IMG/VR virus record: IMGVR_UViG_3300027782_000027
Location: 1 to 64,000 of that record
DNA: 64,000 bases
Reading direction: 5' to 3' (one strand)
Part shown: piece after piece, positions 15,636 through 61,837 of the stretch
Numbering within the stretch: position 1 is the stretch's first letter
Layout of the letters: every line of letters begins with the position of its first letter
Notes under the pieces: generated by a model
Seen by the model: the letters and a program-made list of their open reading frames with translations, nothing else
Database searches by the model: none
Told to the model about the DNA's origin: nothing
Translations under genes and position numbers: made by a program

Positions 15636-15658
15636 AATCCCCCCTACCCCCTTTTTTG
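15636..15658 (+). repeat. dispersed intergenic element AATCCCCC(C)TACCCCCTTTTTT (other copies at 16089, 16513, 20849)
   Basis: four near-identical copies, each just after a stop codon and before TATTTAT. Confidence 0.85.
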
Positions 15659-15679
15659 TTTTGATGTATTTATTGTAAT

Positions 15680-16072
15680 ATGAAATACCAAATCACAAAG
15701 GAACAATATTCTAAACTTGTCTATAAGTTAATTGAAGCATTTTTTAAGGATGTTAAATTTTACAAAGATGATGGTGGGGGTTATTTGACTTATGATATTA
15801 CTGTTGATGGTGAGGATGTTGCTTATATTCACACGAAAAAAAGTCCTCATATAGCTAAGGGATGTGAATATGAACTTGTAATATATGACGATACTATATT
15901 AAAGATAACAGACTTTGTTCCGATTTTTAGGAAGAAGGTATTCTCAAAAATACTCATTAAATATTTTTCTGATATTACTGGCGAAGATATTGATTGTATT
16001 AATTTTGATATGAAACATCCTGGAAGTGATGATACAATTATATATACAAAAAAATTCAAAAAGAAAAAATAA
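15680..16072 (+). CDS. MKYQITKEQ-leader protein
   Basis: variant of the MKYLITE leader. Confidence 0.75.
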   Translation: MKYQITKEQYSKLVYKLIEAFFKDVKFYKDDGGGYLTYDITVDGEDVAYIHTKKSPHIAKGCEYELVIYDDTILKITDFVPIFRKKVFSKILIKYFSDITGEDIDCINFDMKHPGSDDTIIYTKKFKKKK

Positions 16073-16133
16073 TTTTTTTTCGTCGTTCAATCCCCCCTAC
16101 CCCCTTTTTTGTTTTTAGATATTTATATATAAT

Positions 16134-16514
16134 ATGAATACAACAGAACAAGAGCTTAAAGAAATACTTGATTATCAAATTGAGACAATAATAAGAAAGG
16201 GAACAACATATGAATTTCAAATCATTGACTCACCATCAATTTTTATTGATGGGGAAAGTTTTTTATCTCGCACAAATACCGTATCTATAATTAGGGAACA
16301 TCAATTAACCTCAAAATTTAATTCTATAAGAGAAGAATTTGTGAGCCGAGATGAATACGAAACGGTTGATTTTATATTAACGTCCATGGAATTTATTTTA
16401 ACATTCTTGGAGGAACATAAAGGTAAAAGGATATTTATTATGGGTGAGTCATTTAATTCTGGACCAAATCCTTTTTTTGTGAGAACTAAAACTATTAGAG
16501 CAATAGTGGTTTAA
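16134..16514 (+). CDS. hypothetical protein
   Basis: 126-aa ORF. Confidence 0.7.
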   Translation: MNTTEQELKEILDYQIETIIRKGTTYEFQIIDSPSIFIDGESFLSRTNTVSIIREHQLTSKFNSIREEFVSRDEYETVDFILTSMEFILTFLEEHKGKRIFIMGESFNSGPNPFFVRTKTIRAIVV

Positions 16515-20827: not shown

Positions 20828-20894
20828 AATATTTTTTCCCGTTGTTCCAATCCTCCCTACCCCCCTTTTTATTTTCTGATGTATTTATAGTATT

Positions 20895-21677
20895 ATGAGA
20901 AACATAGAACAATATAGAAAAAGATTTTTTAATTTAATGGAATCAACCATTGGTGATGTTAAACCATTGATTAATGAAATTTTCGAGACGGATACAAATG
21001 GAACTTTAAACTATCCTGATGGTACATACACCGGAGACTATCATGCTAAACCTTTCAATCAACCTGTACGACGTGGTTATGGAATTATGAAATGGAATAA
21101 TGGTAATATATACACCGGTAATTGGGGTAATAATACGATGGATGGTTATGGAACTTTTATATATGCTAATGGTCAAAAATATATAGGGGATTTTAAAGAA
21201 GGGACTTTCAGTGGTTATGGAAGTATGACATGGCCTGATGGTCAAAAATATGTGGGATATTTCGAAAATGATTATGCCAATGGTTATGGTTCTTATACAG
21301 AAAAAAACGGAACTATTTACAAGGGAATGTGGAAAGACTTTGAGTTAGTAAATCCTGACATTGTTGAAAGTGAAGTATCGAGTACTGAATGTAATACTTT
21401 AAAGGCGGAAGCCGATAAACAAACATTATATAATCCGACTAATCTTAGTTCAGGTAAATTATCTATTGGTTTAAAAAATCAAGGACCTCTTGTAAAATAT
21501 GTTCAGTGTTTATTAAATGGAAAAAACAAAGAATTAAGTCTTGGTCTAACTGACCTTACAGTTGATGGTATTTTTGGAAATAATACAAAGAAAATGGTTA
21601 GAAAATTTCAAGAAAAGACTGGAGGATTAGGTAATGATGGTGTCGTTGGTAAAAATACATTTTTGAAATTGGTTTAA
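20895..21677 (+). CDS. MORN-repeat protein with C-terminal peptidoglycan-binding domain
   Basis: Y.G.(F/W)....(D/N)GYG repeats; VKYVQ.LL...VDGIFG..T...V..FQ...DGVVG..T (PG_binding_1-like). Confidence 0.85.
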   Translation: MRNIEQYRKRFFNLMESTIGDVKPLINEIFETDTNGTLNYPDGTYTGDYHAKPFNQPVRRGYGIMKWNNGNIYTGNWGNNTMDGYGTFIYANGQKYIGDFKEGTFSGYGSMTWPDGQKYVGYFENDYANGYGSYTEKNGTIYKGMWKDFELVNPDIVESEVSSTECNTLKAEADKQTLYNPTNLSSGKLSIGLKNQGPLVKYVQCLLNGKNKELSLGLTDLTVDGIFGNNTKKMVRKFQEKTGGLGNDGVVGKNTFLKLV

Positions 21678-24902: not shown

Positions 24903-25091
24903 ATGACACAAGAACAAAAATCACAATTGTATAGTAATCTATTATTACAACATACTCGTTTAGATAATCAAATTAATGAGATTAAGGCAGAACATTTTGA
25001 GATGAATGATGAACAGATGGGTAGAATTCGTGTATTACAGTCTAAACAAGGACAACTTGTTGGTCAGATGCAACAGTTGATGCAGGGTTAA
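24903..25091 (+). CDS. small Gln-rich coiled-coil protein
   Basis: 62-aa ORF. Confidence 0.65.
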   Translation: MTQEQKSQLYSNLLLQHTRLDNQINEIKAEHFEMNDEQMGRIRVLQSKQGQLVGQMQQLMQG

Positions 25092-25575
25092 ACCATTCAG
25101 GAATATCTTTATTTTTCCATTTAGCAAAATCTTTCTTAGCTCCGTTATAATAGTTTCTATATGATTCTATAACGTCTGTTACTTTGTATTTATCGGGCAT
25201 TGCTTTTGGCGGTTCTGTAAAACCTTTGTCATGAATGTTTAATTTATTTGTTAAACACCATTCAATCACATCCTGTGATTTATGACGTTTTCCGTATCTA
25301 TAAGTGTATTCCTTACATAACTCAAGTCCTAAGTCACATAGATAAAGATAGTTTGATAATGACTCTCTAACCCATATTGAACAAGGGTGGTTTTTGTGTG
25401 ATAACTTATACGGTACTTGGGCGGTACTTGGGCGGTACTTGGTGGGTGCTTGGTGGGTCACATGGTGGGCTCCACATAATAGTTGTGCAGTCTCAAGTAT
25501 CATCTTAACCACGTGTTTATCACAATGGTATTCTGCGCATTTTTTTGTGTTCCAGTCTAAAAAGAAAATATTCAT
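25042..25575 (-). CDS. pyrimidine dimer DNA glycosylase (denV-like) family protein
   Basis: MNIFFLD...HCDKHVVKMILETAQLL...HKNHPCSIW...YR.YY motifs; start moved to 25575. Confidence 0.8.
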   Translation of the reverse strand: MNIFFLDWNTKKCAEYHCDKHVVKMILETAQLLCGAHHVTHQAPTKYRPSTAQVPYKLSHKNHPCSIWVRESLSNYLYLCDLGLELCKEYTYRYGKRHKSQDVIEWCLTNKLNIHDKGFTEPPKAMPDKYKVTDVIESYRNYYNGAKKDFAKWKNKDIPEWFNPASTVASDQQVVLV

Positions 25576-25642
25576 AATGTAAAAATAGTTATTTTTTTTC
25601 ATTGTTTGATATATTTATAGTAATAAAATTAAAATTAAAATT

Positions 25643-26655: not shown

Positions 26656-27081
26656 TTAGTTTACTGACACAACTTCTAAATCAAAGATAAGTTTCTTACC
26701 TGCTAATGGATGGTTCATATCCAATACCGCAGTACTTTCTTTAACTTCTGTAACTACAACGTTTACAGGACCAAATTGGTTTTGTCCTTGTAACATATCC
26801 CCAGCTTTAACACCTTCAGGGACTTGAGATAGTGGTACTTCACTCATCATTTGAGGTTTAATATCTCCGTAAGCATTTTCTGGCTCAATTTCAATTGTTT
26901 TCATTTCGCCTGCGGTCATATCAATTAATCCGTTTTCAAAACCTGGAATTAATTGACCTTGACCTAATGTTACTGTAAGAGGTTCTCTACCCTCAGCTAA
27001 AGATGTGTCGAATACTGAACCATCTTCTAATTTACCTGTATAATGAACAGATACATTATCACCGTTTTTAATTTTTGTCAT
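26656..27081 (-). CDS. FKBP-type peptidyl-prolyl isomerase (SlyD/FkpB-like)
   Basis: VSVHYTGKLEDGSVFD, LIPGFE, PENAYG, DMNHPLAGKKLIF. Confidence 0.93.
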   Translation of the reverse strand: MTKIKNGDNVSVHYTGKLEDGSVFDTSLAEGREPLTVTLGQGQLIPGFENGLIDMTAGEMKTIEIEPENAYGDIKPQMMSEVPLSQVPEGVKAGDMLQGQNQFGPVNVVVTEVKESTAVLDMNHPLAGKKLIFDLEVVSVN

Positions 27082-27607: not shown

Positions 27608-27688
27608 TTTTTTAAAAAAAATAATGAAAAACTCCCAATCGGGAGTTTTTTTGTTTATATTTGTAGAACAATTAACACCAACACGACT

Positions 27689-27853
27689 ATGAAAAACTTA
27701 AAACTAAAATTGACTTCAGCAATGTTCGCTCTTGTATTATCAGTTGTATTAATGGTAAACTCACCATCATTACCTGTATTCGTTTTAAGTGTTGGTCTTA
27801 TTGTATTACAGACGGTTTTGTGGGGTAAGTTGATGAAAGAGATTAAAGAATAA
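27689..27853 (+). CDS. 54-aa two-TM protein (not in the ORF track)
   Basis: MKNLKLKLTSAMFALVLSVVLMV...; TATATTTG upstream. Confidence 0.6.
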   Translation: MKNLKLKLTSAMFALVLSVVLMVNSPSLPVFVLSVGLIVLQTVLWGKLMKEIKE

Positions 27854-27885
27854 AAAAATCCCCTTATTTGGAGGGGATTTGTAAT

Positions 27886-28710
27886 TTATACTGTTACTTC
27901 TTGTTGTAGTAGTTCGTAAGCTCTTGATAAACGAGTCATTCCTATTCCACCACCAAATCGTGGGAAGAAATCGTGTGATAAAAACTCTTCCAATTCTTTT
28001 TCTACTCTTTCTTTTCCGAATAATTCAAAAAGTTTTTCAGAGTATTTTCCATTTTCTATTGTGTAGAAGTTATTTCTCATTTCTTCTACGTTAGAACTTC
28101 TTTCAGCAGAACCGATAGTCTCTTGTCCGTAAAGAATTACATCAACTTTGTTGAATATTTTGTTTTTACCTTCTCTCATGTTCCAAAAAGGATTTGTTCT
28201 GTAAGGAAAGTTTTGTAGAGACACTACTGGTCCTTTTTCTTCCCACATTTTTGTCTCGTGTTCGTTCTCTAAAATGGATACTCCACCATATTCTTCACAA
28301 ACATCGTCGTAGTTAACTTCTACCTCACTATCAAATCCAAGATAGTCTAAAAGTTCTGATTCAAGTTTTAACATTTCTTTCATTCCACCTTTTGATTCAA
28401 ACTCAAACATTGGAAAAATCATTTCATGACGACCTGGGATTGGGTCTTTTTCTTGTCTATACGACGTTGAAATACAATATACACCATTCCATTCAGGATT
28501 TTTAAGAAGTTCGTATTCTAACCACATTTGACCTGTCTGTGGTAGTGGCCACACTTCTCCTTGATAATTAAATGTTGTTATTGAGTGTGGATTTTCACAC
28601 GCTGCCAAGATTGACAATCTTGATTGGGTTGGAACTTCTTTAAAACCTTTGTTTTGGAAGAATGTTCTCATTTTTTGAACTAACTCGTTGTAAGTTTCTG
28701 TGTTTTTCAT
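27886..28710 (-). CDS. class IIb aminoacyl-tRNA synthetase-like catalytic domain without anticodon domain (AsnRS-like; possible archaeal-type asparagine synthetase)
   Basis: motif 1 FFQNKGFKEVPT, motif 2 SYRQE...RH..IF.MFEFE, motif 3 FGGGIGMTRL; only 274 aa. Confidence 0.8.
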   Translation of the reverse strand: MKNTETYNELVQKMRTFFQNKGFKEVPTQSRLSILAACENPHSITTFNYQGEVWPLPQTGQMWLEYELLKNPEWNGVYCISTSYRQEKDPIPGRHEMIFPMFEFESKGGMKEMLKLESELLDYLGFDSEVEVNYDDVCEEYGGVSILENEHETKMWEEKGPVVSLQNFPYRTNPFWNMREGKNKIFNKVDVILYGQETIGSAERSSNVEEMRNNFYTIENGKYSEKLFELFGKERVEKELEEFLSHDFFPRFGGGIGMTRLSRAYELLQQEVTV

Positions 28711-28745
28711 TTTTTTGTTTTTTTTGTTTTATTTATTAAAAGGGC

Positions 28746-28834
28746 AAAAAAAATCCTGACAAATGTCAGGATTTCTTAAAAATATTATTGTTATTTAAAT
28801 TTCGTAATTTTCTTTTAACTTTTTTTGTAGTCAT
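28746..28834 (-). promoter_or_regulatory. putative Asn-rich leader peptide with terminator (attenuator)
   Basis: uORF 28834-28766 MTTKKVKRKLRNLNNNNIFKKS; hairpin AAATCCTGAC-ATTT-GTCAGGATTT plus U tract. Confidence 0.55.
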
Positions 28835-28907
28835 TAAAATTAAATATATGCGTTTTATTAAAAATAATCAAGATTAACAAAATATTTATTAAAAAGTATT
28901 TATCAGT

Positions 28908-30695
28908 ATGAGGAATTTATTGACTGAAGTTAGTAAGATGAAAAACATGATGGGTTTACAAGAGGCAGATAAGCCAAAATATAACCCTGAAGTAAAATAT
29001 CTTGTTTCAGTTTTAAAAGATAATAAAGTGTATAGTGCTCAAATCCAAAAATTCATTAATAGGATTAATGAATTTTCAAAAGACGGTTTAGTTGATTTTG
29101 GATTAATTACCCGAGGTATTTTAAAAACTTTAAAGTTAAAAGGTAACAAAGATATTAATGTTTTTGAATTTTTCAAACAACTAACTAAATCATTAGAAAA
29201 AAGAAAAAATAAAAAAGAAGTTGTTAATCCTGAAGAAGAACCATCAATTTTAGATAAAGACATTTATAAAAAAGAAATATTTTTTCTACAGGTTGAACTT
29301 TTAAAGTTACAGGAATGGTTAAAACAAACAGGTAAAACTGTTATAATTGTTTTTGAAGGAAGAGACTCGGCAGGTAAAGGTTCTACAATTAAGAAATTCA
29401 CTGAAAATTTAAATCCAAGATATTATAAAGTTATTGCTCTTGGTATCCCAACACCTGATGAAAGAAAGAACTGGTGGGATAGATACAGTAATCAAATTGA
29501 AAAAGGTAAGATAAACTTCTTTGATAGAAGTTGGTACAATAGAGGATTAGTTGAACCTGTAATGGGTTATGGTTCATCAGAAGAGTACGAAGACTTTATG
29601 GATAATGTTCAGGATTTTGAAGAATCATTGGTTGTTGATGGGGATTACTTATTTAAACTTTGGTTCTCAATAGATAAAGAAACTCAAGCTAAGAGATTTG
29701 ATTTCAGACAGAAGTCACCATTGAAATATTGGAAGTATTCTGAGAATGATGAGAAGATGCAAGATGTGTGGGAAAAGTTTACAGAGTATAAACAAAAACT
29801 TTTTGATAAAACATCAACCGTAAACCATCCGTGGGTTATTTTGGACGCTAACGATAAAAAGATTTCAGGTTTAAACTCAATTAGATACGTTTTACAAAAT
29901 ATTCCTTATACAAATAAGGATGAGGATGTTTTAAACAAAGACTTCCCTGAAGCGATGACGGTTTTAAAACCAAATATTAATGAGCAATCAGTTTTTGATT
30001 TCTATAACCAATTAACGGGTAAATCACAACAAAAACAAGAACCAAATTTTATGGATACATGGTCATCTATGGGACAACCAAAAGACCAAATGACACCAAA
30101 TTCAGGAGGTGCTGTTGATGCAGTTAAAGCTGGTGCTAAAAAAATTGCAAAAATTGCAAAAGAAAAGTCATCAAATTCAAATACAGTTGGGGTCGGAACA
30201 GTTTCAGATAAACTTGTAAATTTTGTAGCGAATATTGAGTTTTTTGTTAAGTGTGTTTATGACGACGCTAAAGGTGGTAAATGTGTGAGAAAAGAACCTG
30301 ATTGTTGTTTAAGAGGAAAATCCCCAACTCCCGGAGCAAAGGCAACAATAGGTTATGGTACAACGTATTATCCTGGTGGAATACCTGTTAAACCTAATGA
30401 CCCTGACATTACTGAAACAAGAGCAAAAGAATTAATGAGAAATACATTAAACAAAAATGCAAAAAAAATACTTAATTTATACCCAAACTTAAATCAACAA
30501 CAATTAGATGCGATGGCTTCATTATGTTACCAAATGGGACCTGATGGTTGTACAACAGAAGCTCCAAATTTATCAGCAGCCTTAAAAAGTAATCCAAATA
30601 ATTTACAAAATGTTGGACAACATTTTGTTGATTTCCCATTCAAAGACAGAAGAGAAAAAGAGTGGAAAATTTATAGTCAAGGAATTTATTCTTAA
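28908..30695 (+). CDS. ppk2: polyphosphate kinase 2 fused to a C-terminal GH24 lysozyme-like domain
   Basis: FEGRDSAGKG and FDRSWYNR (PPK2); E...VYDD, TIGYG, LNQQQLDAMASL.Y..G, RR.KE (phage lysozyme). Confidence 0.85.
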   Translation: MRNLLTEVSKMKNMMGLQEADKPKYNPEVKYLVSVLKDNKVYSAQIQKFINRINEFSKDGLVDFGLITRGILKTLKLKGNKDINVFEFFKQLTKSLEKRKNKKEVVNPEEEPSILDKDIYKKEIFFLQVELLKLQEWLKQTGKTVIIVFEGRDSAGKGSTIKKFTENLNPRYYKVIALGIPTPDERKNWWDRYSNQIEKGKINFFDRSWYNRGLVEPVMGYGSSEEYEDFMDNVQDFEESLVVDGDYLFKLWFSIDKETQAKRFDFRQKSPLKYWKYSENDEKMQDVWEKFTEYKQKLFDKTSTVNHPWVILDANDKKISGLNSIRYVLQNIPYTNKDEDVLNKDFPEAMTVLKPNINEQSVFDFYNQLTGKSQQKQEPNFMDTWSSMGQPKDQMTPNSGGAVDAVKAGAKKIAKIAKEKSSNSNTVGVGTVSDKLVNFVANIEFFVKCVYDDAKGGKCVRKEPDCCLRGKSPTPGAKATIGYGTTYYPGGIPVKPNDPDITETRAKELMRNTLNKNAKKILNLYPNLNQQQLDAMASLCYQMGPDGCTTEAPNLSAALKSNPNNLQNVGQHFVDFPFKDRREKEWKIYSQGIYS

Positions 30696-47204: not shown

Positions 47205-47278
47205 GCCTTCGTAGCTCAGTAGGATAGAGCAACAGATTTCTAATCTGTGGGCCAGGGGTTCGAATCCCTTCGGGGGTA
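47205..47278 (+). tRNA. tRNA-Arg (anticodon TCT)
   Basis: GCCTTCG acceptor, TAGCTCAG..GGATAGAGC D arm, ACAGA-TTTCTAA-TCTGT anticodon arm, GGTTCGAATCC T arm; CCA not encoded; promoter and terminator flank it. Confidence 0.93.
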
Positions 47279-47284
47279 CTATTT

Positions 47285-50463: not shown

Positions 50464-50856
50464 TGGTGGAGGTGCTGGGTTTCGAACCCAGGTCCAAAAA
50501 TGTTTACGATAAAACACTACACGTTTAGGTCATTGTTTTTCTAAACAATCCGAAACTTCACAATTCCCTTATTTTATAGTGGTTCGGTTTACTGAGAACT
50601 AATCCTCCACTTTGTTCCTTTTCGGATAGAAACCACACCACGGTACGAGCTTCTGTTTCAAGGCGTATGCTTACCGGCCCATTGTATACTAATCTTAGAT
50701 TAGGCTACAGATACTTCTTCAGTACGGATTAAACCGAGTGTAGAAAGTTTTGCAATTGTGTTGCCGTTTGTTTTTTAAACCAGTTTTACAGGGTTAGTTT
50801 AGCCCCGACGTGCGTTTTATAATAAATTCATTCCTGTCAAATCCAGAAACACCCCC
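50464..50856 (-). ncRNA. ssrA: tmRNA
   Basis: 5' GGGGGTGTTTCTGGATTTGACAGG; 3' CTGGGTTCGAAACCCAGCACCTCCACCA; tag ORF 50765-50700; TATCTTTG promoter upstream. Confidence 0.92.
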
Positions 50857-52873: not shown

Positions 52874-54937
52874 TTATTCCCCCTTTTTCTTTCTTGGTCT
52901 TTTCACTTTTGATGTTTCATCAGGTTGAATTTCAATTTCTGATATTGACACTTCTTCCTCATTAATTTCAATATTGTAGGTTTTATCCATTACAATTTTT
53001 TCACGTAATACTTCATCTGAAATGTAGTCTTCAATCTTTTCTTGAATTGCTCTCTTCAAAGGACGCGCTCCGTAAACATCATCAAATCCAACTTTTGAAA
53101 CAAAGTCAATTACTGACTGACCGAAGTTAATGTTATATCCCAATTTTGACAAACGAGATTTCAATTTGTTAACTTCAACCAAAACAATCTTTTGAATATC
53201 GTCATTTTGAAGTGTATTGAATACAATTACCTCATCCAAACGATTGATAAACTCAGGTGCGAAGTGATTCTTCAATTCTTTGTTTAACATTGTTTTCTTA
53301 AGTTCTTCGTTGGTATAAACATTACCTGTCTTACTAAATCCAACACCTGCTCCAAACTCTTGCATCTTTTTCACCCCAAGATTTGATGTCATAATGATTA
53401 GACAGTTCTTGAAATTAATTTTTCTTCCAAAACTATCCGTCATATAACCTTCATCTAATAGTTGAAGTAATGCTGAGAAGATATCTTTGTGTGCTTTCTC
53501 AACCTCGTCAAATAATACCACAGAGTATGGTTTAGTTTTAACTTGTTCTGTAAGTTGTCCACCTTCATCGTATCCTACATAGCCAGGAGGAGAACCAATC
53601 AAACGAGATACAGTATGTTTATCTTGGTACTCAGACATATCAACTCGAATAAGATTTTCATCGCTACCAAAGATTTGTTTTGCTAATTCTTTTGCCAATA
53701 ATGTCTTACCAACACCTGTTGAACCTAAGAATATAAATGAACCAATTGGTTTATTTGGGTCCTTGATACCTAATCTATTTCTACGAATAGATTTCGCAAT
53801 CTTTGTAACCGCTTCTTTTTGTCCGATAACCGATTTATTTAATTCTTCTTCTAAATTAATAAGAGCAATCTTATCATCTAAATTAAGTTTTGTTAAAGGT
53901 ATTTTTGTCATTGTTGACACCACCTCGTAAACCAATTCTTCAGAAATTGTTTTTCTATTATCTAATAAAGTTTGTTCAAACTTTTTCTTTTCAATATCAA
54001 GTTGTGATAAAACTTTCTTTTCTTTATCTCTTAAGTTAGCAGCTTCTTCGTAATTCTGTTTTTTAACAACAAGTAATTTTTGTTGTTTAATCTCTAACGC
54101 CTGACGTTTTAATTCATCAATTATCTCAGGATTTTTTACATCCACCTGAGCTCTTGCTCCGACTTCATCCAAGATGTCAAATGCTTTATCAGGGAACTCT
54201 CTGTCCGTGATATATCGCTCTGCTAAGTCAACACAGATTTGTAGAATATTATCGGTATAATTTACTTTGTGATAATTTTCGTATCTGTCTTTAACATTTT
54301 TAAGGATTTGTAATGTTTCTTCTTTTGTTGATGAACTAACAATTACTTTTTGGAAACGTCTATCCAACGCTCCGTCCTTTTCAATTTGTTTTTTGTATTC
54401 GTCCAATGTAGTAGCTCCAATACATTGTATTTCACCTCTCGATAATGCTGGCTTTAAGATGTTGGATGCGTCCATGGAACCTGAGGCATTACCCGCTCCG
54501 ACAATAGTATGGATTTCATCAATGAATAGAATAACATTTGGGTTTGCTTGAATTTCTTCCAAAATAACCTTTAATCTCTCTTCAAATTGACCACGATACT
54601 TTGTTCCGGCAACAACTGAATTCATTTCTAATGAAAGAATACGTTTGTCAACCAAGTTTCTTGGACAATCACCTTCAAAAATCTTCATTGCTAATCCCTC
54701 AACAATTGCCGTCTTACCACAACCAGGTTCACCGATGATAATTGGGTTATTTTTCTTTCTTCTTGAAAGAATTTGAGCAATACGTAATATTTCGTCTTCC
54801 CTACCAACAACTGGGTCTAACTTACCTTCTTCAGCAAGTTTAATAAGGTCACGACTAAAATTGTCTAAAACAGGTGTACTTGAGTTAACCTCTGCTTTTT
54901 TTGGTAGTTTCCCACCTTCTTCAACTGAATCTGTCAT
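52874..54937 (-). CDS. clpC: ClpC-like AAA+ ATPase lacking the N-terminal Clp-repeat domain
   Basis: GEPGCGKT, FIDEIH, UVR-type M domain, GSTGVGKT, LFDEVEKAH, YGARPL. Confidence 0.92.
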   Translation of the reverse strand: MTDSVEEGGKLPKKAEVNSSTPVLDNFSRDLIKLAEEGKLDPVVGREDEILRIAQILSRRKKNNPIIIGEPGCGKTAIVEGLAMKIFEGDCPRNLVDKRILSLEMNSVVAGTKYRGQFEERLKVILEEIQANPNVILFIDEIHTIVGAGNASGSMDASNILKPALSRGEIQCIGATTLDEYKKQIEKDGALDRRFQKVIVSSSTKEETLQILKNVKDRYENYHKVNYTDNILQICVDLAERYITDREFPDKAFDILDEVGARAQVDVKNPEIIDELKRQALEIKQQKLLVVKKQNYEEAANLRDKEKKVLSQLDIEKKKFEQTLLDNRKTISEELVYEVVSTMTKIPLTKLNLDDKIALINLEEELNKSVIGQKEAVTKIAKSIRRNRLGIKDPNKPIGSFIFLGSTGVGKTLLAKELAKQIFGSDENLIRVDMSEYQDKHTVSRLIGSPPGYVGYDEGGQLTEQVKTKPYSVVLFDEVEKAHKDIFSALLQLLDEGYMTDSFGRKINFKNCLIIMTSNLGVKKMQEFGAGVGFSKTGNVYTNEELKKTMLNKELKNHFAPEFINRLDEVIVFNTLQNDDIQKIVLVEVNKLKSRLSKLGYNINFGQSVIDFVSKVGFDDVYGARPLKRAIQEKIEDYISDEVLREKIVMDKTYNIEINEEEVSISEIEIQPDETSKVKRPRKKKGE

Positions 54938-55025
54938 AAAATAGTTTTTATTAAAATTAAATGAATTTGTTCTTAAATTCAACTACAAATGTAATTCAAA
55001 ATTATTTATCATTAAAAAAAAAGTT

Positions 55026-60091: not shown

Positions 60092-61837
60092 ATGAGTTTA
60101 TCTAAAGAAGCCGTTTTAATGGAGTATGCCAAGTGTATGAAATCAACACCATACGCCCTTAAAACTTATTTACAGACATATGACAACACTGTTTCAAAGT
60201 ATGTCCCATTAGAGTTATTCCCTGACCAAATTAGTCTGGTTGAAGATTATGAAAACTATAATGAAAATATTGCACTAAAGTATAGACAAGCTGGTGTATC
60301 TACGGTAACCGCTGCTTGGTCATCAAAAAAACTTGTTTTTGCTAAAAAGAATAGTCCTGAAAAGGTTTTGATTATAGCAAATAAGTTGGATACTGCGGTG
60401 GAGGTGGCGAATAAGATTAGAGGATTCACCGACCAATGGCCTAGTTGGGTTGGTGTTGGGTTTTCTGCTGAAAAAAATTCACAAAGACATTTTAAATTAA
60501 CTAACGGATGTGAAGTTAAGGCAGTTGCGACATCTAAGGATGCTCTTCGTGGTTATACACCCACAATATTAATATTTGACGAGGCTGCGTATATTGAAGC
60601 TGATGGGGATTTTTGGGCGGCTTGTATGGCATCCTTATCTACAGGTGGTAAAGTAATAGTTGTATCAACACCAAACGGATATGACGCAATCTATTATGAA
60701 ATTTACGACCAAGCATTAAAGGGAATGAATGAATTCAAAGTTTCCGAAATGGTTTGGTGGAAAGACCCAAGATATGCGAAAGATTTATCATTAGTTAATG
60801 TTAAAGATATTATTCATTATTATTTAAATCGTAATGAATACCCGAATGTTGAAATTATTGAATATAATAATAAAGAAAAGAACTTTGATGAGATAAGACA
60901 ACTGATTTCACAGGGTTATAAGCCAAACTCATCTTGGTATGAGTCAATGGTAAAGAAACTTAAATACGATAAACGTAAAGTTAACCAGGAGTTGGAATGT
61001 GCGTTTCTTGGTTCAGGGGATAACGTATTTAATTCTGATATGTTGGAAGATTTAAGGGTAAATATGGTTAAGGAACCACCTACGAAGATGATGGGTGGTG
61101 GACTATGGATTTGGAAAGAACCTGAAATAGGTAAAAAATATATCATGGGAGTTGACGTATCTCGTGGTGACAGTGAAGACTTTTCAACATTTCAAATTGT
61201 TGATTTTGATACAAGAGAACAGGTTGCTGAGTATGTTGGTAAACTTCCTCCTGACACTTTGGCTGAAATATGTTATAAGTGGGGTAATATGTATAATGCG
61301 TTCATTGTTGTGGATATTACTGGTGGTATGGGTGTTACAACATCTTTAAGATTAAGGGAACTTGGATATAGGAATGTGTATGTTGATGGAGTTGATGTGT
61401 CAAACAAATGGCAATACGACCCAAAGGCAACTGAAAAAATACCAGGAATTAACTTTAATGCTAAAAGAGTTCAAATTATAGCAACTTTTGAAGAATATCT
61501 AAGACATGGATTTAGAATAAATTCAAGTAGGTTGTTAAATGAAATGAATACATTTATTTACATGAATGGAAGACCTGACCACCAAAAGGGACAACATGAT
61601 GACTTGATTATGTCTGTTGCGATGGCACTTTATGTTGGTGAAACATCATTTTCATCACTTAACAAGGTGACAAATCAAACAAAGGCGATGATTGACTCGT
61701 GGACTGTTAACACTAATGAATTTAATAGAAGACAATTTATGGACCCGGTAATTTCACAACAACAAGAAAACTTTAAACGAGAGGCAACAAAAAGTGACTA
61801 CGAAAACTATTTATGGTTATTCGGTGGTAAACGATAA
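60092..61837 (+). CDS. terL: terminase large subunit (T4 gp17-like)
   Basis: KYRQAGVST Walker A variant, ILIFDEAAY Walker B, STPNG, QELEC.FLG, GVDVSRG, HDDLIM. Confidence 0.93.

What the first reader, a model, noticed from the sequence alone, without database searches (positions are those of the whole stretch)
28746..28834. Asn-rich leader peptide and terminator upstream of the AsnRS-like gene: candidate amino-acid attenuator in a phage
Seen: minus-strand uORF MTTKKVKRKLRNLNNNNIFKKS has 5 Asn in 6 codons. Its TGA lies in the 5' arm of a perfect 10-bp hairpin with a U tract, about 35 nt before the gene start. Established: leader peptides enriched in the cognate amino acid control biosynthetic and synthetase genes. 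Inference: Asn-sensing attenuation, which supports an asparagine-related function. Caveats: AAT is common in AT-rich DNA, and no antiterminator was identified, so the switching logic is unresolved.
Basis: partly seen in the sequence, partly recalled or inferred. Interest (0 to 1): 0.68.

Follow-up and report, generated by a model that had tools for sequence, protein, structure and literature searches.

The report
Phage leader peptide attenuator, Asn-biased
A jumbo phage places a tiny asparagine-rich reading frame and a strong terminator hairpin between a promoter and a synthetase-like gene, and dozens of related phages keep the same layout, so it is most likely a translation-sensing switch rather than chance.

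Summary

It is not chance. Among 81 distinct upstream regions of orthologues in viral contigs, 59 keep the same order: promoter-like box, ATG 12-17 nt later, short ORF, hairpin, T7-9, mostly GCCC, A-rich spacer, gene. The hairpin has 12 different, always perfectly paired cores. The uORF frame stays open up to the hairpin in all 25 representatives, against 3/25 for each other frame. None of the 59 has the promoter box between terminator and gene, so the gene must be read through the terminator.

No antiterminator exists, and the stop lies -14 to +13 nt from the hairpin core. This fits a pyrBI/pyrE-type attenuator, in which a closely following ribosome blocks the terminator, better than a trp/his-type one.

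Asn is about 1.6-fold enriched over a composition-matched null and peaks 12-35 nt before the hairpin. Asn runs occur in only about 40-45% of lineages, so Asn sensing is plausible but unproven. The gene is an AsnRS/AspRS catalytic-core paralogue of unknown function.

The parts
28866..28871 (-). -35-like hexamer TTGATT of the leader promoter
   Evidence: TTGATT, 17 nt, TATATT. TTGAYT-like hexamers sit at the same spacing in many related leaders.
28841..28848 (-). Promoter-like box TATATTTA, 13-14 nt before the uORF ATG
   Evidence: TATTTAT/ATATTTA is 22-26-fold enriched upstream of genes of this genome. It lies 12-14 or 21-25 nt before real start codons. It lies 12-17 nt before the uORF ATG in 23 of 25 lineages.
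28766..28834 (-). Leader ORF (uORF), 22 codons plus TGA, probably leaderless
   Evidence: The frame is open to the hairpin in 25/25 lineages against 3/25 in each other frame.
28784..28801 (-). Asn-rich stretch (codons 12-17: N L N N N N)
   Evidence: Asn enrichment and position.
28751..28774 (-). Terminator hairpin: 10-bp stem, 4-nt loop, with the uORF stop in the 5' arm
   Evidence: -12.8 kcal/mol. There are 12 distinct perfectly paired cores among relatives.
28746..28753 (-). Run of eight T (U tract); the first three also close the stem
   Evidence: T8 in 41, T9 in 16 and T7 in 2 of 59 leaders.
28742..28745 (-). Conserved GCCC right after the U tract; role unknown
   Evidence: GCCC in 42 and ACCC in 7 of 59 leaders. 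Unique to this site in the window.
28711..28741 (-). A-rich, unstructured spacer with no promoter box and no Shine-Dalgarno
   Evidence: No box between T run and ATG in 59/59 leaders under the strict pattern. Only 7% of genes in the genome have an SD-like site.
27886..28710 (-). Regulated gene: 274-aa class IIb aaRS catalytic-core paralogue (AsnRS/AspRS-like, no anticodon-binding domain)
   Evidence: PF00152 E 8e-13, phrog_29758 E 2e-96, AsnRS by profile and by fold.
27856..27880 (-). The gene's own bidirectional terminator, which makes the unit monocistronic

Best explanation
This is a ribosome-mediated transcription attenuator without an antiterminator, of the pyrBI/pyrE type. A promoter (TTGATT, 17 nt, TATATTTA) starts an RNA at or next to the uORF AUG. 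RNA polymerase then meets a strong intrinsic terminator 35 nt before the AsnRS-core gene. That gene has no promoter of its own, so it is made only when the terminator is read through. Read-through happens when a ribosome translating the uORF follows the polymerase closely enough to occupy the 5' arm of the hairpin, where the stop codon lies. If the ribosome starts late or is held up, the hairpin folds and the transcript ends. Asn codons are concentrated 12-35 nt before the hairpin. A ribosome waiting there for Asn-tRNA would leave the hairpin free, so low Asn-tRNA would switch the gene off and ample Asn-tRNA or active translation would switch it on. Shown here: the anatomy, its conservation, the stem covariation, the maintained reading frame, the lack of an antiterminator or a second promoter, and the Asn bias and its position. 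Inferred: that the uORF is translated, that the terminator works, the polarity, and the Asn specificity. My confidence in a translation-coupled attenuator is about 0.5. My confidence in the Asn-specific part alone is about 0.35.
For: Anatomy. 59 of 81 distinct orthologous upstream regions keep box + uORF + hairpin + T7-9. There are 12 distinct hairpin cores, all Watson-Crick, with 3-4 pair types at stem positions 4-6. The uORF frame is open to the hairpin in 25/25 lineages, against 3/25 in each control frame. The uORF ATG sits 12-17 nt after the same box that precedes about 70 real genes of the genome at 12-14 or 21-25 nt, and the genome uses almost no SD, so lack of an SD is not an objection. 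The uORF stop lies -14 to +13 nt from the hairpin core in 56 of 59 leaders and beyond the hairpin in the other 3. In E. coli a stop codon 5 bp before a terminator lowered termination from about 90% to under 10%, and the effect vanished beyond 27 nt (PMC4824070). There is no upstream partner for the 5' arm in 20/25 lineages and only 3-5 weak pairs in the rest. There is no promoter box between terminator and gene in 59/59 leaders, and the spacer is only 10-13 nt in some lineages. It is the only terminator in the genome that lacks an upstream gene. Asn is 17-20% of uORF codons, against 11-12% in a Markov null trained on the same regions and 6.6% in intergenic small ORFs. NN share is 41-45% against 13-16%, and NNN 20-22% against about 1.5%. 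With 12 conservative clusters, P is about 0.005, 0.015 and 0.0004. Lys matches the null. Asn makes up 28-31% of codons 12-35 nt before the core and 4% at 48 nt or more. The gene is AsnRS-like. Its cyanophage homologues are followed 8 nt later by a tRNA with the Asn anticodon GTT.
Against: There is no expression data. The only RNA-library evidence is contigs of relatives, which cannot show ends and may be DNA. Asn runs are absent from more than half of the lineages. The CCCCTC lineage has no Asn before the hairpin, and several others have only one. The window's lineage has no recognisable pause hairpin to synchronise ribosome and polymerase, although seven other lineages have a small hairpin inside the uORF. 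A terminator within the first 100 nt of a transcript is expected to be hard for a ribosome to catch (PMC4824070). The host is unknown, so transcription-translation coupling is assumed. The polarity 'Asn low = off' is unusual for a biosynthetic or charging enzyme. The lineages are related, so the P values are approximate.
Confidence: 0.5

Rival explanations
1. The architecture is the same, but it is not an amino-acid sensor. The leader is a generic translation-coupling gate, or simply a leaky terminator that keeps expression of the enzyme low. The Asn bias would be a by-product of A-rich, (AAT)n-like sequence in a frame that must avoid TAA.
For: Asn runs are missing in about 55-60% of lineages. 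In an AAT repeat only the Asn and Ile frames are open, and frame +2 carries 56 stops. Lys is as abundant as Asn and is explained by composition. The uORF-terminator coupling is the universally conserved part.
Against: Asn exceeds a null trained on the same sequences. It is the most enriched abundant residue when lineages are grouped into 12 clusters; at 23 clusters Pro, a rare residue, shows a higher ratio. Asn peaks in a defined window before the hairpin while Lys does not. The runs mix AAT and AAC, so they are not pure repeats. There is an independent Asn link: an AsnRS-like fold, and tRNA(GTT) next to the cyanophage homologues.
Confidence: 0.25
2. Classical polarity: a ribosome stalled at Asn codons close to the hairpin covers the 5' arm and prevents termination, so Asn starvation turns the gene on, as in biosynthetic attenuators.
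For: In some lineages (L022, L037, L038, L057) Asn codons lie 2-5 nt before the hairpin core, or form the AAU at the base of the stem. In the window the last Asn codon starts 15 nt before the core, so the front of a stalled ribosome would reach the A-U extension of the stem. This polarity would suit an Asn-making or Asn-charging enzyme.
Against: Most Asn codons lie 12-35 nt upstream, where a stalled ribosome leaves the GC core free (distance dependence in PMC4824070). Asn is only 14% of codons in the last 11 nt before the core. The positions vary widely, which a steric-block model tolerates poorly.
Confidence: 0.12
3. The promoter, short ORF and terminator form an independent tiny gene for a micropeptide or a 70-100 nt small RNA. 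The enzyme gene downstream is expressed only by incidental read-through or from an unrecognised promoter.
For: Promoter + short transcript + strong terminator is also the anatomy of an sRNA or micropeptide gene. Ordinary genes of this phage likewise have a terminator 13-27 nt after their stop. Sub-threshold Rfam hits are to sRNAs and a Phe leader, all driven by the terminator.
Against: Peptide sequence and length are poorly conserved (7-44 aa) while the open frame is kept, which is typical of regulatory leaders and not of functional peptides. An sRNA does not need a maintained ORF. The unit is always linked to this one gene, in 59 leaders. The spacer can be as short as 10-13 nt, and no promoter box follows the terminator. 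No Rfam family reaches threshold.
Confidence: 0.1
4. It is a chance ORF next to an ordinary terminator in AT-rich DNA.
For: The genome is 32% G+C, and short ORFs and AAT triplets are common.
Against: Conservation of the layout, the frame test, the covariation, and its uniqueness among the genome's terminators.
Confidence: 0.03

Closest known systems
E. coli pyrBI and pyrE attenuators (translation-coupled intrinsic termination)
   Same: A leader ORF whose translation runs into or up to an intrinsic terminator. There is no antiterminator. Read-through depends on how closely the ribosome follows the polymerase (my own knowledge, plus PMC4824070).
   Different: There the coupling is set by UTP-sensitive polymerase pausing, and the leaders are 44 codons (pyrBI) or a whole upstream gene (pyrE). 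Here the leader has 7-44 codons, probably on a leaderless RNA, is biased to Asn codons, is carried by a phage and controls an aaRS-like gene. No pause site was identified in the window's lineage.
trp/his/leu/thr/phe-type leader-peptide attenuators
   Same: A short leader peptide enriched in one amino acid, an intrinsic terminator before the structural gene, and an amino acid thematically linked to the gene.
   Different: Those have a mutually exclusive antiterminator and keep the terminator more than 20 nt from the leader stop (PMC4824070). Here no antiterminator exists, the stop lies within or next to the hairpin, and the regulatory codons are not conserved in all lineages.
Archaeal asparagine synthetase A (AsnRS-core paralogue, PDB 3P8T/3RL6) and AsnRS catalytic domains
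   Same: The regulated protein has the same size and fold: a class IIb catalytic core without an anticodon-binding domain. Motif 2 and motif 3 residues are invariant in 26 homologues.
   Different: Identity is only 20-22%. The NCBIfam scores are far below the cut-offs (22-29 bits against 322-414). It is a virus-specific family (phrog_29758; Atlas clusters are 75-100% viral). Its substrate is unknown.
T-box leaders of aaRS genes
   Same: A terminator-based leader in front of an aaRS-type gene that would read tRNA charging.
   Different: There is no specifier loop or T-box sequence, the leader is only about 90 nt, and there is no Rfam hit. Sensing here would go through a translating ribosome.

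Membership tests
Leader-peptide transcription attenuator, classical trp/his type | Short translated ORF in the leader transcript | tested here: inconclusive
   The ORF is present, keeps its frame (25/25 against 3/25) and has the start context of real genes. Translation itself was not observed.
Leader-peptide transcription attenuator, classical trp/his type | Intrinsic terminator between the leader ORF and the structural gene | tested here: met
   A 10-bp stem plus U8, -12.8 kcal/mol, conserved with covariation.
Leader-peptide transcription attenuator, classical trp/his type | Alternative antiterminator pairing with the terminator 5' arm | tested here: not met
   Folding from the AUG to the 5' arm in 25 lineages gives no pairs to the arm core in 20 and 3-5 weak pairs in 5. 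The leader energy is 0 to -2 kcal/mol in most of the short leaders.
Leader-peptide transcription attenuator, classical trp/his type | Conserved cluster of codons for the sensed amino acid | tested here: inconclusive
   Asn is enriched 1.6-fold and positioned 12-35 nt before the hairpin, but NN is present in only 41-45% of lineages.
Leader-peptide transcription attenuator, classical trp/his type | Read-through responds to the amino acid | not testable with these tools
   This needs reporter assays, Term-seq or coupled in vitro assays.
pyrBI/pyrE-type coupling attenuator | Leader ORF ends within, or a few nt before, the terminator hairpin | tested here: met
   The stop lies -14 to +13 nt from the hairpin core in 56/59 leaders and is read through the hairpin in 3. 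In the window the TGA lies in the 5' arm.
pyrBI/pyrE-type coupling attenuator | No antiterminator; the ribosome itself blocks the hairpin | tested here: inconclusive
   The absence of an antiterminator is shown. Blocking by the ribosome is inferred from the E. coli data in PMC4824070.
pyrBI/pyrE-type coupling attenuator | Polymerase pause sites that let the ribosome catch up | tested here: inconclusive
   Seven lineages have a small hairpin inside the uORF; the window's lineage has none. The GGA-U8-G arrangement resembles the elemental pause consensus, but this rests on my own knowledge and was not tested.
T-box riboswitch | Match to the T-box covariance model | tested here: not met
   No Rfam hit at gathering score or at E up to 1.
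Asparaginyl-tRNA synthetase / asparagine synthetase A (regulated gene) | Class IIb catalytic core with motifs 2 and 3 | tested here: met
   PF00152 E 8e-13. Motif residues are invariant. Foldseek gives E 5e-13 to AsnRS, with TM by query 0.62-0.73.
Asparaginyl-tRNA synthetase / asparagine synthetase A (regulated gene) | Score above the family's curated cut-off, or an anticodon-binding domain (AsnRS) | tested here: not met
   NCBIfam gives 22-29 bits against cut-offs of 322-414. The protein covers only the catalytic core, 274 aa against about 430-450.
Asparaginyl-tRNA synthetase / asparagine synthetase A (regulated gene) | Asn or Asp as substrate | not tested
   Active-site specificity residues were not analysed, and no biochemistry is available.

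The most novel reading that the evidence does not exclude
This would be a phage-encoded, asparagine-sensing leader-peptide attenuator built on a leaderless uORF, with feed-forward polarity: the gene is on only when Asn-tRNA is plentiful. It would control a virus-specific AsnRS-core enzyme that acts on Asn or on a tRNA with the GUU anticodon, as hinted by the odd long-arm tRNA(GTT) next to the cyanophage homologues. That would be the first Asn-type leader and one of very few amino-acid attenuators known in a virus.
Probability: 0.3. Interest if true: 0.75.

Novelty: new variant of a known kind. Interest (0 to 1): 0.62.

Why it matters
Leader-peptide attenuation is textbook bacterial regulation, but it is hardly documented in phages. 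I found no described Asn-type leader in four of my six full-text searches aimed at this. Here the comparative signal is strong: 59 independent upstream sequences, 12 compensating stem variants and a maintained reading frame. That gives a compact element of about 130 nt that can be tested directly in reporters or coupled in vitro systems. It would show how a jumbo phage ties expression of a translation-related enzyme to the host's translational state. It also gives a functional hint (Asn, AAY codons, tRNA-GUU) for a widespread viral aaRS-core family of unknown function. Finally, it is a natural example of direct ribosome-versus-terminator control on a probably leaderless RNA in a system that uses almost no Shine-Dalgarno sites.

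Tried and rejected
1. Consensus terminator scan. It missed the site, apparently because stem extension consumed the T run, so I read the site by hand and with a custom scan.
2. MAFFT/RNAalifold on the hairpin. The 5' arms were misaligned because stems differ in length, so its pair counts are not used. I replaced it with per-sequence stems counted from the base.
3. Single-linkage clustering of leaders at 65% identity. It chained nearly everything into one cluster in this low-complexity DNA, so I repeated it at 80% and 72%.
4. T-run+GCCC as a genome-wide motif or promoter. Rejected: the only other copy lies inside a gene with no hairpin. A MotA-box-like or -35-like reading fails in lineages where the spacer is only 10-13 nt.
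5. A second promoter for the gene. The box is absent in all 59 leaders.
6. Antiterminator search: none found.
7. Rfam at gathering and at permissive thresholds: only terminator-driven sub-threshold hits.
8. Sequencing runs. Only assembled contigs of relatives were available, with shares of 0.23 or less. One contig from a metatranscriptome spans promoter, leader and gene start of a relative, with a 72-letter replacement of the uORF region. It also runs into the divergent gene and may be DNA, so it is no evidence of a transcript, its ends or read-through.
9. tRNA next to the gene in this phage family. None was found in 16 family loci (L073 carries tRNA-Met and tRNA-Arg about 1 kb upstream, not adjacent). 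The genome itself has only tRNA-Arg and a tmRNA.
10. Two further locus scans with divergent queries mostly returned the same contigs and added 14 new upstream sequences.
11. Literature searches found no description of this element or of the protein family's function.
12. The large protein searches, complex prediction and the covariance-model tools were not used, because no claim here needed them.
I redid it with numeric offsets only.

Full report
**Context.** The window is the first 64 kb of a 240,759-bp virus record with about 32% G+C. It carries a large terminase subunit (60092-61837), a Lon-like protease, a tmRNA and one tRNA. Its nearest DNA matches in the phage collection are uncultured huge phages and T4-like cyanophages.

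The finding lies in the 197-bp divergent intergenic region 28711-28907. On one side is a 274-aa gene on the minus strand (27886-28710). On the other is a PPK2-lysozyme fusion on the plus strand (28908-30695).

**Observation.**
- The uORF is 28834-28766, with 22 codons. Codons 12 and 14-17 are Asn.
- The TGA (28768-28766) lies inside the 5' arm of a perfect 10-bp hairpin (28774-28751, loop 28764-28761, -12.8 kcal/mol).
- Eight T follow (28753-28746), then GCCC, and the gene ATG is 35 nt after the T run.
- The generic terminator scan missed the site. I think its stem extension consumed the T run; this was not tested.

**Is it more than chance? Comparative evidence.** The protein has hundreds of close relatives (72-100% identity) in viral contigs. 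I collected 81 distinct upstream sequences.
- 59 of them have the same order of elements: a promoter-like box, an ATG 12-17 nt later, a short ORF of 7-44 codons, a GC-cored hairpin, T7-9, usually GCCC (42) or ACCC (7), and an A-rich spacer of 10-50 nt before the gene ATG. One more (L119) has the layout with an imperfect stem.
- Five have the hairpin after an ordinary upstream gene.
- The rest have other contexts.

The hairpin occurs with 12 different cores among 25 representative lineages. All are perfectly complementary, with three to four different Watson-Crick pair types at stem positions 4-6. That is compensatory change under selection for structure.

The reading frame is also selected. 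Starting from the ATG that follows the box, frame 0 runs to within 15 nt of the hairpin or beyond in 25/25 lineages. Frames +1 and +2 do so in 3/25 each. I originally picked the uORFs by where they end, but the box-to-ATG distance is an independent criterion and agrees in 23 of 25.

Within this genome, 33 terminator-like hairpins exist. Ten are followed by a gene within 70 nt. Nine of those sit 13-27 nt from the end of a same-strand gene. Only the one at 28751-28774 has no gene to terminate.

**Promoter and translation signals.** The heptamers TATTTAT and ATATTTA are 22-26-fold enriched in the 30 nt upstream of this genome's genes (69 and 49 of 270). By a looser pattern, 77 of 270 genes carry the box within 60 nt. 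The box starts 12-14 nt or 21-25 nt before the ATG. Only 7% of genes have an SD-like sequence.

The uORF ATG lies 13-14 nt after TATATTTA (28848-28841), with a TTGATT 17 nt upstream. This is the same context as about 30 real genes of the short-distance class. I infer that the transcript starts at or within a few nucleotides of the uORF AUG, making it leaderless. I also infer that the absence of an SD is not evidence against translation.

In none of the 59 leaders does the box occur between the terminator and the gene (0 by the strict pattern, 1 by the loose one). In several lineages the spacer is only 10-13 nt. The enzyme gene must therefore be transcribed through the hairpin.

**Mechanism.** I looked for an antiterminator by folding the RNA from the AUG to the end of the 5' arm in all 25 lineages. 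In 20, the arm core pairs with nothing. In 5 there are 3-5 weak pairs. The upstream leader is nearly unstructured in the shorter lineages.

The uORF stop lies -14 to +13 nt from the first base of the hairpin core in 56 of 59 leaders. In three (the CCCCTC lineage) the ORF runs through the hairpin and ends about 9 nt before the gene ATG.

Experiments in E. coli bear on this geometry. A stop codon 5 bp before an intrinsic terminator reduces termination from about 90% to under 10%. The repression needs translation and disappears when the stop is more than 27 nt away. Classical amino-acid attenuators keep their terminators more than 20 bp from the leader stop precisely to avoid this (PMC4824070).

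The geometry here therefore matches the pyrBI/pyrE type. A ribosome that keeps up with the polymerase occupies the 5' arm and lets the polymerase pass. A late or stalled ribosome lets the hairpin fold.

**Asparagine.** I counted the codons of 25 representative uORFs that lie before the hairpin.

| Measure | Observed | Comparison |
|---|---|---|
| Asn share, in frame | 20.4% | 8.7% and 4.4% in the other two frames |
| Asn share | 20.4% | 6.6% in small ORFs of this genome's intergenic DNA; 12.4% in a second-order Markov null trained on the uORF regions themselves |
| Lys share | 19% | 18% in the Markov null, so explained by composition |

Because the lineages are related, I repeated the test with one member per cluster.

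| Clusters | Asn | NN share | NNN share |
|---|---|---|---|
| 23 | 18.1% vs 11.3% | 45% vs 13% | 22% vs 1.1% |
| 12 (conservative) | 17.2% vs 11.0% (P about 0.005) | 41% vs 13% (P about 0.015) | 22% vs 1.4% (P about 0.0004) |

With 12 clusters Asn is the most enriched of the common residues. With 23 clusters Pro, which is rare in these peptides, shows a higher ratio.

The Asn codons are also positioned. They make up 28-31% of codons whose first base lies 12-35 nt before the hairpin core, 18% at 36-47 nt, 14% at 1-11 nt and 4% at 48 nt or more. Lys shows no such peak. Within the window's own lineage, an AAT/AAC exchange keeps Asn.

Against a strict Asn sensor:
- More than half of the lineages have no Asn doublet.
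- The read-through lineage has no Asn before the hairpin.
- Part of the bias is expected, because an AAT-rich stretch can only be open in the Asn or the Ile frame.

The position of most Asn codons means that a ribosome waiting there would not cover the GC core. The simplest reading is that scarce Asn-tRNA leads to termination. A minority of lineages have Asn codons 2-5 nt before the core, where a stalled ribosome would block the hairpin. The polarity is therefore not settled.

**The regulated gene.**
- Pfam tRNA-synt_2 (D/K/N), E 8e-13.
- A virus-specific PHROG of unknown function, E 2e-96.
- Weak NCBIfam hits to AsnRS, archaeal-type asparagine synthetase A and EpmA, all far below their cut-offs.
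- A profile of 26 homologues finds only AsnRS in PDB (E 4e-8).
- An AlphaFold model (pLDDT 72.7, pTM 0.77) matches AsnRS/AspRS catalytic domains best. It also matches, over its full length, the archaeal asparagine synthetase A, which has the same core-only architecture.
- Motif 2 and motif 3 residues are invariant.

The gene is thus an AsnRS/AspRS-core paralogue. Its substrate is unknown.

A second, independent link to Asn comes from Prochlorococcus phages P-SSM2 and P-SSM7. There the homologue (annotated 'tRNA ligase') is followed, 8 nt after the stop in P-SSM7, by an unusually long (85-88 nt) tRNA with a long variable arm and the Asn anticodon GTT. Those phages have no leader, and this genome has no such tRNA.

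**Unexplained.** The conserved GCCC after the U tract has no partner in the leader and is not a genome-wide motif. From my own knowledge, GGA-U8-G resembles the elemental pause consensus (G at -10, pyrimidine at -1, G at +1). That could lengthen the time window at the terminator. I did not test this.

**Expression data.** The only runs holding related sequence are assembled contigs with shares of 0.23 or less. They cannot show transcript ends or strands, and the one bridging contig may be DNA.

**Verdict.** It works most like the pyrBI/pyrE class and is not a member of the trp/his class, because the antiterminator was tested and is absent. Asn sensing is statistically supported but not universal, and its polarity is open. 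I rate it a new variant of a known kind.

Noticed in passing
L083:1434-1520 and L082:1425-1512 (Prochlorococcus phages P-SSM7, P-SSM2): An 85-88 nt tRNA with a long variable arm and the Asn anticodon GTT lies directly after the stop of the AsnRS-core homologue (8 nt after it in P-SSM7). A type-II-shaped tRNA with an Asn anticodon next to an anticodon-domain-less AsnRS-like enzyme looks like a dedicated pair.
   Followed up: partly
window 28908-30695 (+): A single 595-aa ORF joins a polyphosphate kinase 2 domain (residues 115-338, E 2e-70) to a phage lysozyme domain (residues 475-548). It is transcribed divergently from the leader.
   Followed up: no
window 50464-50856 (-) and 47205-47279 (+): A phage-borne tmRNA (Rfam 130 bits) with an unusual tag peptide ending in VSVA, and a tRNA-Arg(TCT). 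These are the only two such RNA genes in the 240-kb record.
   Followed up: no
whole genome G000; e.g. window 3819/3852, 9168/9201, 19118: A promoter-like box (TATTTAT core) sits 12-14 or 21-25 nt before the ATG of about 70 of 270 genes, often as back-to-back divergent pairs. Only 7% of genes have an SD-like site. Many genes may therefore be expressed from leaderless or very short-leader mRNAs.
   Followed up: partly
L030, L037, L038, L055, L061, L069, L078 (10-25 nt before the terminator): These leader lineages carry an extra small hairpin inside the uORF, a candidate polymerase pause site. The window's lineage has none.
   Followed up: partly
L042, L068, L080: In the lineage with stem core CCCCTC, the uORF reads through the terminator and ends about 9 nt before the gene ATG. 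This suggests translational coupling to the main ORF in addition to terminator masking.
   Followed up: no
window 27689-27853 (+), between hairpins 27626-27651 and 27856-27880: A 54-codon hydrophobic ORF, a possible small membrane protein, is boxed in by two bidirectional terminators just downstream of the AsnRS-core gene.
   Followed up: no
window about 15640-15680, 16095-16134, 20855-20895 (+): A repeated C-rich element (CCCCTACCCCC followed by a T run) lies directly before the promoter box of three genes. It looks like a recurring terminator-promoter cassette.
   Followed up: no
window 52874-54982 (-), 26656-27081 (-), 25042-25602 (-): A Lon-like ATP-dependent protease (phrog_4871, E 1e-237), an FKBP-type prolyl isomerase and a T4 endonuclease V-like pyrimidine-dimer glycosylase are encoded near the finding.
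   Followed up: no
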